The position numbers and the translations under genes are program-made. This document shows, in pieces, positions 6,287-10,747 of a stretch of 63,561 nt of DNA. The notes beneath the pieces were generated by a model. That model saw only the letters and a program-made list of their open reading frames with translations. It searched no databases and was not told the DNA's origin. Source of the DNA: Octopus sinensis (taxonomy: Eukaryota); NCBI RefSeq assembly GCF_006345805.1, contig NW_021831876.1:1-63561 (forward strand), read 5' to 3'. The stretch's first letter is position 1. The number at the start of each line of letters is the position of its first letter.

Positions 6287-6306
6287 TTCAGATGATTGTA
6301 ACAGCG

Positions 6307-8354
6307 ATTTCATTACCCACAAGGGGCTTAACACAGAGGTACGAATACACGTAAGGACCGTACAAAACAAACAGGACAGCATAAAGAAAAGACACAAAAG
6401 TGGGCTGAAAAAGCGAATGCAAAAAGATTGAGGTGCCACTCGCACCACACACCGAACGATGTCATTGAGTATTTTTCTCAGTCAATGTCATCGCATATAT
6501 TTTCTGTTTCTCTTTTAGAAAAAAGTTTTTCACAATAACATTTCAGACATTTTTAAAAACCTTTACTATCTAAAAATCACTAGTACATTCGTGTTCAAAT
6601 GACTGAGGGCAGTGAATCAATCACCACCTCCGACCCCAACGGATTCACATCCGCTCCAAATTTCTCATTCAATTTTAGGTAATTTTCTTTATCCATTAGT
6701 ACACACTTCAATTCAGGGGATGGGGTTCCCCTACCGGCAACTCACCTTTATCGTTGATTTCAGTTTTTTAAATTTTTCTATGCAGTGCTGCATTTTTCCC
6801 CTTACATTCACCATGAATACTGTTTTATGGGGAGAAGGCCGTGAGGTTTGCGGCTTTTGACTGTCTGCAAATGAATATGAAGGTGCTGGGCCGGTGTCCG
6901 GAGGGGTGGAACTGGAAGTGGTGTCTGTTACGCAAGGTGTTAATGGTGGAGAGATGTCCTCTGTAAATGGGTTATAGGAGATGATCGTGTTAGATGCTTG
7001 TTCTTTGTGTGTGAAGTTATGAGATATTATTTTAGGGGGAGTATCTTTTGTATCCCCCTTTTTTTTTCTTGGTAGTTGGTTCTTCCTTGATGCTGCTTTC
7101 TTTCTCGCTGCTGATCTCGGTTGATTTTTTCTCCGGATGGGTTTCTTCCTTGGGGCTGTTTTCGGACTGCATTGTTGTGGTCTCGATTACGTTTTGCTTT
7201 TCTATTGGGATGGCTTGTATTGGGTTGGCAACAATGTTGGCTGGTTTCTTCTCCTGCCTTTTGTCTGTTAGGTTGGCGGGTTTTCCAGTACCGATGCTCA
7301 TTGATTCTTCTGGTTGTAGTGGTGTGCTAGGAGCAGGGTATGCTTCGTGTTGCGAAACCTGAGGACACTTGGTCTTTAAGTGACCCATTTCCCCACATTT
7401 CTGACAACTTGGGCTTCTGCTCTCTACTCTAATTCTCAGTTTAGTGTCGTCTGGTAGGATAATTTGATCTGAGATCTCATCTAAGTCACTTGGGGTGGCT
7501 TGGATTGTTACATCCAGGCCATCGCCCCATCAATTTTGTTGTGTCTTAGTTGCTTTCAATATTTTTCCCGTCTTTTAAGTTCAACATTATTGCTGCTATC
7601 AACTACATCTCGTCAATTTCAGAAGGGACTTCCCCAATTTTAATTCTGGATGTCCTTTTTCGGAGATAAGTCGGCAGTAACACCAGTTCTGCCGATGGCG
7701 CTATGGCCTGGATGTAACGATCCAAGCCACTTTGGTAGAGTGTTTTAAAGCTTCCTCTTCTGAAGCAAACCTCACCTCCACCGTACCAAGAGGCTTTGCT
7801 TTGTTTAAAATTTTCACCTCATTCCAAATTTGGCTTAGACATTTTTCGACGGCATCCTCAGATGTCATCTCTAATTTTTCGTTGCCAGTAAACAGTCCGC
7901 TACCATACAGTTTTCCTCTTGGTACTCTCTCTAAACTCTTCTGGTGAGGGTGTGGGTTCAATCTCACATTCGTCCCCTCCTTCTGTAGTAATTCCATGTA
8001 CTCTTTGAGTTTGTTCTGTCTGACACTCAGTCGCTTTTGACTTGGGCTGCTGATGCGTAACTGCCTCTTTTGGCCATGGTCACGTAACCACTTTCGGTGT
8101 TTTGAGCTTCCGTTAAGTCGCTCTCCAGTTCAGGCCAATGATCCATGAAGTTGCCCATACTCTACATAAAATACAAGTTTCGCCCCTAAATGGTGTAAAA
8201 CCAGTAATAAACACAAGCCTGCAAACGCAGGCAGAGCGCCAAAAGATGCAAAATCAATAGCAAACAAAAGGCAATCCCAAAAGGGAAAGCCTACAACAAT
8301 GTAAAACCAACAAGTACTTAGCTTCACAGTAGAAAAAAACGTCTTTTCAACTCG
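6307..8354 (-). mobile_element. Tx1/L1-clade non-LTR element 1 (decayed ORF1 with CCHC knuckle; no ORF2 recognisable)
   Basis: CQKCGEMGHLKTKC zinc knuckle (~7370-7410); TVEVRFASEEEALKHS and VAWIVT shared with element 2; flanked by 17-bp direct repeats. Confidence 0.75.
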
Positions 8355-8371
8355 AGATGATTGTAACAACG

Positions 8372-8643
8372 ATTTTTTATTGTCCACATGGTGCTTAACA
8401 TAGAGTGACAGTACAAAGATGGACAAAAACACAGAAGTGGGGGAAAAGATTAAACGAATGAGAAGGGTGGTATAAAAAATGAATGGATGAAATGAAGGCC
8501 ACTCGGACCCCACAATCCAAGTGATCTCATTGAAACTTTTTAAAAAAGCAATTAAACACTTACTATGTCCGTGTTAATTTCTTTTAAAAGCTCATGATAG
8601 CTTACCGTTGACTGCACTCCTCTGGTATCAATTTCCTTTTGTG
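8372..8643 (-). mobile_element. Short 5'-truncated 3' end of a related non-LTR element
   Basis: Minus-strand end ctctatgttaagcaccatgtggacaataaaaaa resembles the 3' ends at 6308 and 8654. Confidence 0.55.
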
Positions 8644-8653
8644 AGATAATTCG

Positions 8654-10535
8654 TTCATTTATTGGCCACAAGGGCTAACAAAAATCAATTAAAACATAAA
8701 GGGACAAAACACAGGACGAAAGTTACAAAGGGTTTTGTCCGTTTGAAAAAAGTCCGTGTACAAAAGAAGGATAACAACAAAATGTAAGTAACAATTAAAA
8801 CTCCCAATAGGAGGAAGCACTTCGAAAGTTTACTCGTGGAAAAACCCATAAAAGCCACGGGAGCCTGGTCAAAAGGGGGGTAGAGAGCCCCTTTCTCTTT
8901 TTATATTTCCTTTTAATCTTTTTTTACAGGTGTATCCTCAGAATTGGTCCGTTCATACTGACCATTGTTGCGACATTCACCCACCTTTCAATAAACTTGC
9001 TACCAGACAGCACTTCCCTCTCTACTCTCATCTTCCTTTTCAAGTGAAACTTGAAAAAGTTGATGAGATAATGACATTTCTCCCGTAATCCTCGCGTAAT
9101 CTTTGTGAGTTCTTTCTCTCCATTAATACACATTTAACTTGCGAGGGCACTCCCCCACATCCTTCAATATCGACTTTTATCAATTCGTCCACATTGTTTA
9201 TTTCATCGCACAACTCATCAAGTGACTCATTGCAAAAGAAACAATACAACTTTTTTCATAGGGTTGAAGTTGGGAAATTATGGGGCTCCTGCGTGTTTGT
9301 AGCTTTAGTATCAGTGTTTGGTGGGATAGGGTGAGGGTTGGTTTTCTTGCGGGGGGAGGATAAGGCAGAGTCTGGCGGAGTGGGGGTTGGATGTGTGGGG
9401 TAACATCAATATCCTGAGTTCTCTTTTTCCAGCTTACCGTCTTCCATTCTTCCCTTTTCTCTCCTCAATTTGTGTCTCCTTGCCGGGCTTCTCCACACTC
9501 CCTCCTGTACCACTTGTCATTGCAGGAGGTAGAGGGGCGATTTTCCTTCGGACCTGTAGTACTGCTGGTGTCTTTGTGATCGGTGGAGAGCATTCCCCTC
9601 TTATGTGGCCCTTCTGGCCACATTTATAATATCGGGGCTTCCTGCCCACCACTATAACTCTTAATACCACCTCCTCACCCACCGTTATGGTGTCGACCAT
9701 TCTTTCAAGGTCTTCCGGGGCAGCCCGCATGATTATCTTCAAGGTCTGCCCTTGCCAATTCTTCGGTGGCGTTCACGTTACTTGGAGGACCTCTATCTTC
9801 TGTTCTACATCCAGTAGTATTGCGGTCACCAGCCAGGCGACATTTACGTCCGCAGGAATCTCTTCCACCCTTACCCTGGAAGCAGCTTTCCATGATAAGT
9901 AAGCAAAAGTATTACCTCGTCCGTTTTCAAGAAGGCTACCGAATGTTGTCTGGCCTTTTCCTAGGATGCAAATTGGACCTCCACAGTTGCGTATTTCCTC
10001 CCTCTGGCAAGGTAGGTGACATCCTGCCAGATGGGTCTCAATGCTTTCTCAACTTGTGGTTTTTTTACTATCTCCATTCTCTTTGCATCCAGATTATACA
10101 TTCTATACATAATTGCCTTTTTTGTGTGCCCTTTGTAACTTCACTAGGAGGGGTCACCTTTACTTTGTGCCCTTCTCTTCGCAGGATTTCTTTGTACTTG
10201 TTCAACTCCATCTTCTTAAAACAAATCTCTTTTCTTCTTTCACCAGCCGCAACTGCAAAATTCATTATTTTTTTTCCACCTTGATTTTTTTTCATCTTCT
10301 GGTCTGCAATATCCAAACTTCTCGGTAATTCTTTTTCAGACATCGTTACGTCTGAAGAATCCAAATCTTCAGACATCATGAAGACACAATTTATGCGCTT
10401 CCTCCTTGAAACAAGGTGGACAACGTTAACAAAACTACCGTAAGGCAGCAATTAATAACAAAAATAATTCTAATTCAACAATGCTTCACTAACCTCTCTA
10501 ACGACGCACAAACAACATCACGAACAAGCCGGTCC
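8654..10535 (-). mobile_element. Tx1/L1-clade non-LTR element 2 (ORF1 plus putative ORF2 C-terminus, internal deletion)
   Basis: ATVEVQFAS*EKARQHS, VAWLVT, YKCGQKGHIRGEC knuckle; LINFFKFHLKRKMRVEREVLSGSKFIERWVNVA resembles an L1/Tx1 ORF2 end; AATAAA 3' end. Confidence 0.75.
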
Positions 10536-10747
10536 AGATGATTGTAATAACGGTGAAAAGAAATCAATGTTAATTTATTGATGCATTTGAACAATTCTAT
10601 GTCTGTATAATCAGTCAAGTGCAAAAACATTATTAAAAACATTTTTAATTCTGCAAAACTCCATTACAATTTTTTTGTGGTTCAAAACGTTGCTTGCGTT
10701 TTACTCAACCTGATAGATAAATTCCTATATATATATATATATATATA

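What the first reader, a model, noticed from the sequence alone, without database searches (positions are those of the whole stretch)
6290..10552. Candidate sequence-specific Tx1-like retrotransposon family that targets a mariner 5'UTR: stacked insertions with a triplicated 17-bp target
Seen: the 17-mer agatgattgtaac(a)(a/g)cg occurs at 6290-6306, 8355-8371 and 10536-10552, and a possible degraded fourth copy (agataattcg) sits at 8644-8653. Each interval holds a same-orientation non-LTR element whose 3' end abuts the target. Removing the inserts restores a ~1.1-kb mariner whose ATG (6284-6286) lies 3 nt from the target. Elements 1 and 2 are homologous but clearly diverged (TVEVRFASEEEALKHS vs TVEVQFAS*EKARQHS), so they are not a tandem duplication. 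Established: Tx1-clade APE retrotransposons are often target-specific, and Xenopus Tx1L inserts into a DNA transposon. Inference: a cephalopod lineage uses mariner copies as a landing site, cutting the transposase off from its promoter. I know of no description of this, but cannot check.
Basis: partly seen in the sequence, partly recalled or inferred. Interest (0 to 1): 0.88.

Follow-up and report, generated by a model that had tools for sequence, protein, structure and literature searches.

The report
Stacked LINE insertions in one mariner site
Three different octopus LINE-type retrotransposon copies have landed one after another in exactly the same 17-base site of a dead mariner transposon; this is a clear case of target-site reuse, but of a kind already described for Tx1-type LINEs in crocodilians.

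Summary
The 17-mer occurs three times (6290, 8355, 10536; none expected by chance), with a degraded fourth copy at 8644-8653. Between the copies lie three, not two, same-orientation non-LTR elements: E1 (8354-6307), a 272-bp 5'-truncated E2a (8643-8372) and E2b (10535-8654). Removing them restores a 1,115-bp mariner with both inverted terminal repeats.

E1 and E2b carry a CCHC ORF1 but no ORF2. Full-length relatives in Octopus and Argonauta encode APE, RT and zf-RVT, and their best solved-structure match is human L1 ORF2p. That places the lineage in the L1 superfamily; Tx1 membership is probable but could not be tested.

Three diverged elements sharing one target-site duplication (TSD) means sequential insertion by a target-selective machinery. 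"Mariner is the family's target" is not shown:
- a SINE with E1's tail lands elsewhere;
- relatives sit in (ATT)n, in a unique site, or stacked on kin LINEs;
- no other mariner copy could be retrieved.

The "5'UTR/promoter cut-off" idea fails, because this mariner already lacks codons 1-72.

The phenomenon is published: Tx1-Mar and SINEU target Mariner-N4_AMi with a 16-bp TSD and tandem insertions (Kojima 2015). This is a new member of a known kind.

The parts
5355..5390 (-). mariner 3' inverted terminal repeat (TCAGGCTGAGTAATTAAGTAAGCAACGTTTTGAAAC read on + strand)
   Evidence: pairs with the ITR at 10679-10713
5391..6289 (-). mariner body: decayed transposase remnant matching residues 73-339 of Hsmar1-like transposases (homology 6247-5436), with stops, frameshifts and an 8-codon internal duplication
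6290..6306 (.). target copy T1 (AGATGATTGTAACAGCG on +; CGCTGTTACAATCATCT in element sense)
6307..8354 (-). E1: 2,048-bp ORF2-less LINE derivative. 5'UTR 8354-8159; ORF1 from ATG 8158, frameshifted, with an RRM-like part near 7990-7700, a CCHC knuckle near 7400-7350 and the conserved C-terminal motif at 6729-6646; 3'UTR and tail 6645-6307
   Evidence: tail shared with a SINE
8355..8371 (.). target copy T2 (AGATGATTGTAACAACG on +)
8372..8643 (-). E2a: 272-bp 5'-truncated element of the same tail family, 3'UTR and tail only
8644..8653 (.). degraded target copy T' (AGATAATTCG on +: the 17-mer minus 7 bases, with one substitution)
8654..10535 (-). E2b: 1,882-bp ORF2-deleted LINE. 5'UTR 10535-10380; ORF1 from ATG near 10379 with a CCHC near 9640-9600 and the C-terminal motif at 9153-9073; last ~39 codons of ORF2 at 9067-8951; 3'UTR and tail to 8654
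   Evidence: (73.5% nt identity over 415 nt to a full-length O. sinensis LINE)
10536..10552 (.). target copy T3 (AGATGATTGTAATAACG on +); it abuts mariner sequence, not an element tail
10553..10678 (-). mariner 5' non-coding segment between the ITR and the target
10679..10713 (-). mariner 5' inverted terminal repeat (TCAGGTTGAGTAAAACGCAAGCAACGTTTTGAACC in sense), preceded by TA

Best explanation
A non-autonomous, internally deleted mariner copy was hit at least three separate times, at one 17-bp site and in one orientation. The insertions were ORF2-less or 5'-truncated copies of an octopod L1-superfamily (probably L1-Tx1) LINE lineage, mobilised in trans by autonomous relatives.

Inferred mechanism:
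1. The APE endonuclease nicks the bottom strand at the left edge of the site (top strand ...TTTTCAC|CGTTRTTACAATCATCT).
2. Reverse transcription is primed there.
3. The top strand is cut 17 nt downstream.
4. The site is duplicated on both sides of the insert.
5. Each insertion therefore regenerates two intact targets, so later elements re-enter and build the stack T3-E2b-T'-E2a-T2-E1-T1.

Shown: the anatomy, the independence of the three elements, the LINE nature and superfamily of their relatives, and that the 17-mer is target-derived. Inferred: that the endonuclease is sequence-selective, the nick positions, and trans-mobilisation.
For: - Three exact or near-exact 17-mers plus one degraded copy bracket each element.
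- T3 is flanked by mariner sequence, not by a tail, so the 17-mer belongs to the target.
- The same tail occurs on 6 SINE copies and 8 LINE relatives without the 17-mer.
- E1, E2a and E2b are mutually diverged: no blastn hit between E1 and E2, and 49-56% identity at the 3' ends. E2a is 5'-truncated. This excludes duplication.
- The flanks rejoin into a mariner with paired ITRs.
- Relatives are bona fide APE-type LINEs with 13-18-bp TSDs: the Argonauta element has a 15-bp TSD; the O. sinensis stack has 16- and 18-bp TSDs.
- ORF2 of a full-length relative has Exo_endo_phos + RVT_1 + zf-RVT and matches human L1 ORF2p at 2e-71.
- E2b's 3' 410 nt are 73.5% identical to a full-length O. sinensis LINE.
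- Exact precedent: Tx1-Mar/SINEU in Mariner-N4_AMi, with a 16-bp TSD and tandem insertions sandwiching a TSD.
Against: - Only one locus is available. No other copy of E1, E2a, E2b or of this mariner could be retrieved.
- The SINE that shares 31 of 33 terminal bases with E1 inserts at unrelated sites, with TSDs such as TATCGTCTTGT.
- Relatives lie in (ATT)n, in a unique site, or next to kin LINEs, never in a mariner.
- The mariner's internal deletion ends within about 40 nt of the site. The local sequence therefore cannot be proven to be native mariner by protein homology.
Confidence: 0.7

Rival explanations
1. Kin-end homing. This LINE lineage preferentially integrates within a few tens of bases of the 5' end or 3' tail of an already resident relative, in the same orientation. 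The first hit in the mariner was fortuitous. The later two were attracted by the resident element, not by mariner sequence.
For: Same-orientation stacks turned up in 3 of 5 informative, independently sampled relatives' loci.
- O. vulgaris: a head-to-tail array of at least 3 full-length 5.28-kb copies.
- O. bimaculoides L010: an element whose 13-bp TSD lies at the very start of the next element.
- O. sinensis L018: four elements of different families, with three different TSDs within about 100 nt.
None of these stacks involves a mariner.
Against: In the window all three insertions used the identical 17-bp interval. That fits reuse of a defined site better than loose proximity. In L018 the neighbouring insertions use different TSDs. 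No mechanism for sensing a resident copy is known.
Confidence: 0.22
2. Single-event concatemer. The reverse transcriptase switched templates from the 5' end of one LINE RNA to the 3' end of another, so the whole stack was inserted at once.
For: SINE copies in the window form head-truncated dimers flanked as a unit by one TSD. This fits either template switching or homology-mediated resolution.
Against: Each internal junction carries the full target 17-mer, which template switching between element RNAs would not supply. The three target copies have each picked up different substitutions.
Confidence: 0.04
3. The 17-mer is part of the element (terminal sequence or transduced flank), or the array arose by DNA-level tandem duplication.
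For: The 17-mer directly continues from homologous tails at two junctions.
Against: There are three copies for a two-interval array, and T3 abuts mariner sequence. The 17-mer is absent from all 21 related loci, from SINEs with the same tail and from inside the elements. E1 and E2b share no nucleotide similarity.
Confidence: 0.03

Closest known systems
Tx1-Mar LINEs and SINEU SINEs targeting Mariner-N4_AMi in crocodilians (Kojima 2015, PMC4494074)
   Same: An L1/Tx1-type APE LINE machinery inserting at one position of a non-autonomous mariner; a 16-17-bp TSD; tandem, same-orientation insertions of different families sandwiching a TSD; non-autonomous passengers mobilised in trans.
   Different: Host is a cephalopod rather than a crocodilian, with an unrelated target sequence. 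Here only one locus is known, so family-level preference (90% of copies for SINEU-3) is not shown. The passengers are ORF1-bearing deleted LINEs, not snRNA-headed SINEs. The tails are short and A-rich after a conserved ...CCCTTGTGGNNAATAAA motif, rather than plain poly(A).
Tx1L in Tx1D (Xenopus), with Keno, Kibi, Koshi and other target-specific Tx1-clade families (Kojima and Fujiwara 2004; as summarised in PMC4494074)
   Same: Target-specific APE-type LINEs whose targets are repeats: DNA transposons, snRNA genes, microsatellites. One relative here (L017) sits inside an (ATT)n microsatellite.
   Different: Clade membership of the octopus elements was not tested by phylogeny. Target preference for the octopus families rests on single loci.
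HAL1 (half-L1) elements of mammals
   Same: LINE derivatives that keep 5'UTR, ORF1 and 3' end but lack ORF2, and depend on autonomous relatives. E1, E2b, L009, the first element of L018 and the L001 contigs have this form.
   Different: The ORF1 type is different (RRM-like + CCHC + a conserved C-terminal motif). Origin is independent. Whether the octopus forms are amplifying families or one-off deletions is unknown.
Head-to-tail LINE arrays such as HeT-A/TART at Drosophila telomeres, or R1/R2 in rDNA
   Same: Same-orientation stacks built by repeated integration at a regenerated or terminal site. HeT-A is also gag-only.
   Different: The octopus stacks are interstitial, involve TSDs of 13-18 bp, and are not tied to telomeres or rDNA.

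Membership tests
Non-LTR (LINE) retrotransposon insertion | Insert flanked by a target-site duplication of about 7-20 bp | tested here: met
   A 17-bp duplication brackets E1 and E2a+E2b; a degraded copy lies between E2a and E2b
Non-LTR (LINE) retrotransposon insertion | Variable 5' truncation with a fixed 3' end | tested here: met
   E2a keeps only the last 272 bp with the conserved tail
Non-LTR (LINE) retrotransposon insertion | Encodes endonuclease and reverse transcriptase (ORF2) | tested here: not met
   No ORF2 in E1 or E2a; only the last ~39 codons in E2b. Met in full-length relatives L008, L017, L018 and L019. The window copies are therefore non-autonomous derivatives.
L1 superfamily (L1/Tx1) | APE endonuclease + RT + C-terminal Cys-rich domain, closest to L1 ORF2p | tested here: met
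   Tested on the relative in L008: Exo_endo_phos, RVT_1, zf-RVT; human L1 ORF2p 2e-71 over residues 3-868, against R2 at 1e-24
Tx1 clade | RT groups with Tx1L, Keno, Kibi and others in a phylogeny | not testable with these tools
   No reference Tx1 sequences could be fetched. The only indirect support is that L1-Tx1 is the sole L1-type group listed among active O. vulgaris LINEs.
Sequence-specific LINE family (Tx1-Mar-like, mariner-targeting) | Most copies of the family are flanked by the same target sequence | tested here: inconclusive
   Three insertions share one site in this locus. No further copies of these families or of the mariner were retrievable. Relatives and the tail-sharing SINE lie at other sites.
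mariner (Tc1/mariner, Hsmar1-like) | Paired ~30-bp ITRs and a DD34D-type transposase | tested here: met
   ITRs match at 29 of 35 positions. tblastn gives 53% identity over residues 107-339 and 62% over 73-109 of 339-aa transposases. Residues 1-72 are absent, so this is a deletion derivative.
HAL1-like ORF1-only derivative | Complete ORF1 with 5' and 3' ends, ORF2 missing | tested here: met
   ORF1 in E1 and E2b runs from the ATG to the conserved C-terminal motif, as seen in P0129, P0136 and P0137, followed directly by the 3'UTR

The most novel reading that the evidence does not exclude
The octopod L1/Tx1-like lineage as a whole may home to regenerated targets or to the ends of resident kin. 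It would then build interstitial same-orientation stacks: full-length arrays in O. vulgaris, mixed-family stacks in O. sinensis and O. bimaculoides, and this mariner stack. ORF1-only 'half-LINEs' would ride the same machinery. The shared TTTCAC|C at the nick position of two independent sites would be the first glimpse of its cleavage motif.
Probability: 0.3. Interest if true: 0.6.

Novelty: new member of a known kind. Interest (0 to 1): 0.4.

Why it matters
If a genome-wide census confirms it, cephalopods would join vertebrates as hosts of L1/Tx1-type LINEs that use other transposons as safe landing pads. The 17-bp site would be a defined substrate for studying how an APE endonuclease reads sequence. 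The stacks and the ORF1-only derivatives bear on how the very repeat-rich octopus genomes are structured. As it stands, this is one well-resolved locus illustrating a published phenomenon.

Tried and rejected
- **Short conserved piece after the CCHC.** I first read it (E1 6729-6646, E2b 9153-9073) as the start of an APE domain. Homologues show it is the conserved C-terminus of ORF1.
- **Word-indexed protein searches.** They found no ORF1 relatives and only 2 with a profile. The exhaustive profile search found 517.
- **Window ORFs.** None is in the protein collection. Mariner homologues are at most 55% identical and none is from an octopus, so other mariner copies could not be fetched.
- **Rival "the 17-mer region is a LINE 5'UTR remnant".** No similarity between the empty-site region and any LINE 5'UTR in 21 loci.
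- **Target-like guide inside the elements.** Only chance-level matches.
- **Overall similarity between the window site and the L018 site.** Not significant; only the 7-mer TTTCACC at the same register.
- **Metagenome scan for the empty site.** 0 hits.
- **Pfam on neighbouring retroelement-like ORFs.** No hits.
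Full report
**Observation**

The 17-mer AGATGATTGTAACARCG (up to 2 mismatches) occurs at 6290-6306, 8355-8371 and 10536-10552, all on the + strand. Chance expectation is 0.06, and none of 100 dinucleotide-preserving shuffles reaches three hits. 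A shortened copy, AGATAATTCG at 8644-8653, lies exactly between one element's tail and the next element's 5' end. Everything between the copies is coded on the minus strand.

**The host element**

On the minus strand the outer flanks form a mariner.
- ITRs: TCAGGTTGAGTAAAACGCAAGCAACGTTTTGAACC at 10713-10679, preceded by TA, pairs with the ITR at 5355-5390.
- Coding remnant: 5436-6247 matches residues 73-339 of 339-aa Hsmar1/SETMAR-like transposases, at 53-62% identity with stops and frameshifts.
- Empty site: joining the flanks gives 1,115 bp. Nothing corresponds to residues 1-72.

This is therefore an internally deleted, non-autonomous copy. The ATG at 6284-6286 is not the native start. The insertion site lies next to the deletion point, not in a working 5'UTR.

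**The inserts**

There are three, not two.
- **E1 (8354-6307, 2,048 bp).** It has a 5'UTR, a frameshifted ORF1 with an RRM-like part and a CCHC knuckle (Pfam zf-CCHC, E 2e-4), a conserved C-terminal motif and a 3'UTR.
- **E2b (10535-8654, 1,882 bp).** It has the same plan, plus the last ~39 codons of an ORF2 at 9067-8951.
- **E2a (8643-8372).** This is a 272-bp 5'-truncated copy carrying only the 3'UTR and tail.

E1 and E2b share no nucleotide similarity but are homologous as proteins. The three 3' ends are 49-56% identical. They are three different elements of one lineage, not duplicates.

**What the elements are**

A profile of the two ORF1s finds 517 relatives among 1.84 billion representatives. 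The best are proteins of Octopus vulgaris, O. sinensis, O. bimaculoides and Argonauta hians. All are at most about 50% identical to E1 or E2b. Several carry the same C-terminal motif, which shows it belongs to ORF1.

Genomic loci of these relatives show full-length LINEs.
- **O. vulgaris (L008):** a 5,278-bp unit with ORF1 (503 aa) and ORF2 (1,132 aa). ORF2 carries Exo_endo_phos, RVT_1 and zf-RVT.
- **Solved-structure match:** the best hit is human L1 ORF2p, 2e-71 over residues 3-868, against 1e-24 for R2.
- **Tail:** the units end in ...CCCCTTGTGGGTAAATAAAATAAAACA, the same tail family as E1, E2a and E2b.
- **Link to E2b:** its last 410 nt are 73.5% identical to the ORF2 end plus 3'UTR of a full-length O. 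sinensis LINE (L017), and 77.7% over 130 nt to an Argonauta one.

E1 and E2b are thus ORF2-deleted (HAL1-like) derivatives of an L1-superfamily lineage. A recent O. vulgaris repeat annotation lists L1-Tx1 as the only L1-type group among active LINEs (PMC13282606). Tx1 membership is therefore likely, but I could not test it phylogenetically.

**Is the 17-mer target or element?**

It is target.
- T3 is adjacent to mariner sequence on its outer side and to the 5' end of E2b on the other, with no tail nearby.
- Three copies for a stack is what T-E-T-E-T predicts.
- E1's terminal 33 nt recur (31 of 33) at the end of a tRNA-like-headed SINE at 16794, 16983, 18010, 18198, 22855 and 55789. None of these copies is followed by the 17-mer.
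- The 17-mer is absent from the 8 related loci in hand when it was searched for, and no window piece carrying it matches the later loci. It is also absent from inside the elements.

**Mechanism**

The simplest reading is sequential target-primed reverse transcription at one site.
1. Bottom-strand nick at ...TTTTCAC|CGTT...
2. Top-strand nick 17 nt downstream.
3. Duplication of the site, then re-entry into a regenerated copy.

Relatives show the same style of integration: a 15-bp TSD for the Argonauta element, and 16- and 18-bp TSDs in the O. sinensis stack. Identical nick positions used by three diverged passengers imply that the shared trans-acting machinery selects this sequence.

**Limits on "a family that targets mariner"**

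I could not retrieve any other copy of E1, E2a, E2b or of this mariner. What could be sampled points to a more varied picture.
- The tail-sharing SINE lands at unrelated sites. One dimer is flanked by TATCGTCTTGT.
- L017 lies inside an (ATT)n microsatellite, present on both sides.
- The Argonauta element is in a unique-looking site.
- Three of five informative loci show same-orientation stacks that do not involve a mariner:
  - an array of at least 3 full-length copies, 98.3-99.6% identical, with differing junctions;
  - an element whose 13-bp TSD lies at the very start of the next element;
  - four elements of different families with three different TSDs within about 100 nt.

A tendency to integrate beside resident kin is therefore a live rival for why the second and third insertions came here. 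One small lead for real sequence selectivity exists. The window site and the 18-bp TSD site in L018 both have TTTCAC|C at the same register left of the TSD. Otherwise the two sites are not similar.

**Comparison with the literature**

Kojima 2015 (PMC4494074) reports the following:
- Tx1-Mar LINEs and SINEU SINEs insert preferentially into Mariner-N4_AMi.
- The original TSD was AGGTTCCCATCAGCAT (16 bp).
- Tandem insertions sandwiching a TSD arise by sequential insertion.
- Other Tx1 families target Harbinger transposons, LTR elements and microsatellites.

The present locus is the same phenomenon in a cephalopod, seen at a single site. It is a new member of a known kind, not a new kind.

**Verdict**

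Interest is moderate (0.4). It comes mainly from the possible lineage-wide stacking behaviour and the ORF1-only derivatives, both of which need a genome-wide census.

Noticed in passing
window 16790-18290 and 22790-23060; also 55570-55830: A SINE about 250 bp long, with head GGCGGCGAGCTGGCAGAA... and tail ...CCCCTTGTGGGTAATAAAGAAATAGGTA (shared with E1), occurs as dimers. In each dimer the tail of one unit is joined to position ~63 of the next unit's head, at GGTA|TTTCGTCTG. The dimer at 16807-17200 is flanked as a unit by the TSD TATCGTCTTGT. Two dimers form an inverted pair at 16800-17140 and 17880-18290.
   Followed up: partly
L008 (O. vulgaris OX597840.1, 31.866-31.879 Mb): A head-to-tail array of at least three full-length 5,278-bp LINEs, 98.3-99.6% identical, one with both ORFs open. 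The unit junctions differ slightly. The array starts at L008:431 next to unrelated sequence. Its 3' end lies outside the fetched stretch.
   Followed up: partly
L018 (O. sinensis CM016867.1) 1479-18850: A same-orientation stack of four LINEs of different families, each within tens of bases of its neighbour's end: one ORF1-only element and three full-length ones. Exact TSDs are GGATGTGATATAATGA (1479 and 3186) and CAACTGAATACTCGTCAT (8360 and 13628).
   Followed up: partly
L017 (O. sinensis CM016872.1) 8722-8778 and 14346-14375: The full-length LINE closest to E2b's 3' end is flanked on both sides by an (ATT)n microsatellite, suggesting a microsatellite-targeting family.
   Followed up: no
E1, E2b, L009, L018 element 1, L001-L006, L021: ORF2-less or ORF2-deleted copies that keep a complete ORF1 are common in this lineage. 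Six independent Logan assemblies (runs SRR11869384 to SRR11869394) carry the same 1.7-kb ORF1-only contig with an open 294-aa ORF, so some such elements may be expressed or recently active.
   Followed up: partly
window 4025-4058: A solitary ITR, 94% identical to the 3' ITR of the mariner, lies 1.3 kb from it with no recognisable mariner interior beside it.
   Followed up: partly
window 7495-7531 and 7694-7730: A 37-bp inverted repeat (92% identity) inside E1's ORF1, coinciding with the most scrambled part of the reading frame. A small inversion or hairpin-mediated rearrangement is possible.
   Followed up: no
window 1880-3054 (+) and 4398-4742 (+): ORFs that by eye carry an RT YADD box and a GIY-YIG-like C-terminal part (Penelope-like element?). 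A repeated fragment (QSSILYQHAKD.HGGNLG) lies 1.5 kb downstream, and the two are separated by microsatellites. Pfam gave no hit.
   Followed up: partly
window 39155-39391 (-) and 38649-39104 (-): A fragment of another LINE reverse transcriptase: 37% identity to residues 572-657 of the L008 ORF2.
   Followed up: no
window 6290 region and L018:8353-8360: Both TSDs are preceded by TTTCAC and begin with C (TTTCAC|C), at the same register. This may be a shared nick-site motif or a coincidence.
   Followed up: partly
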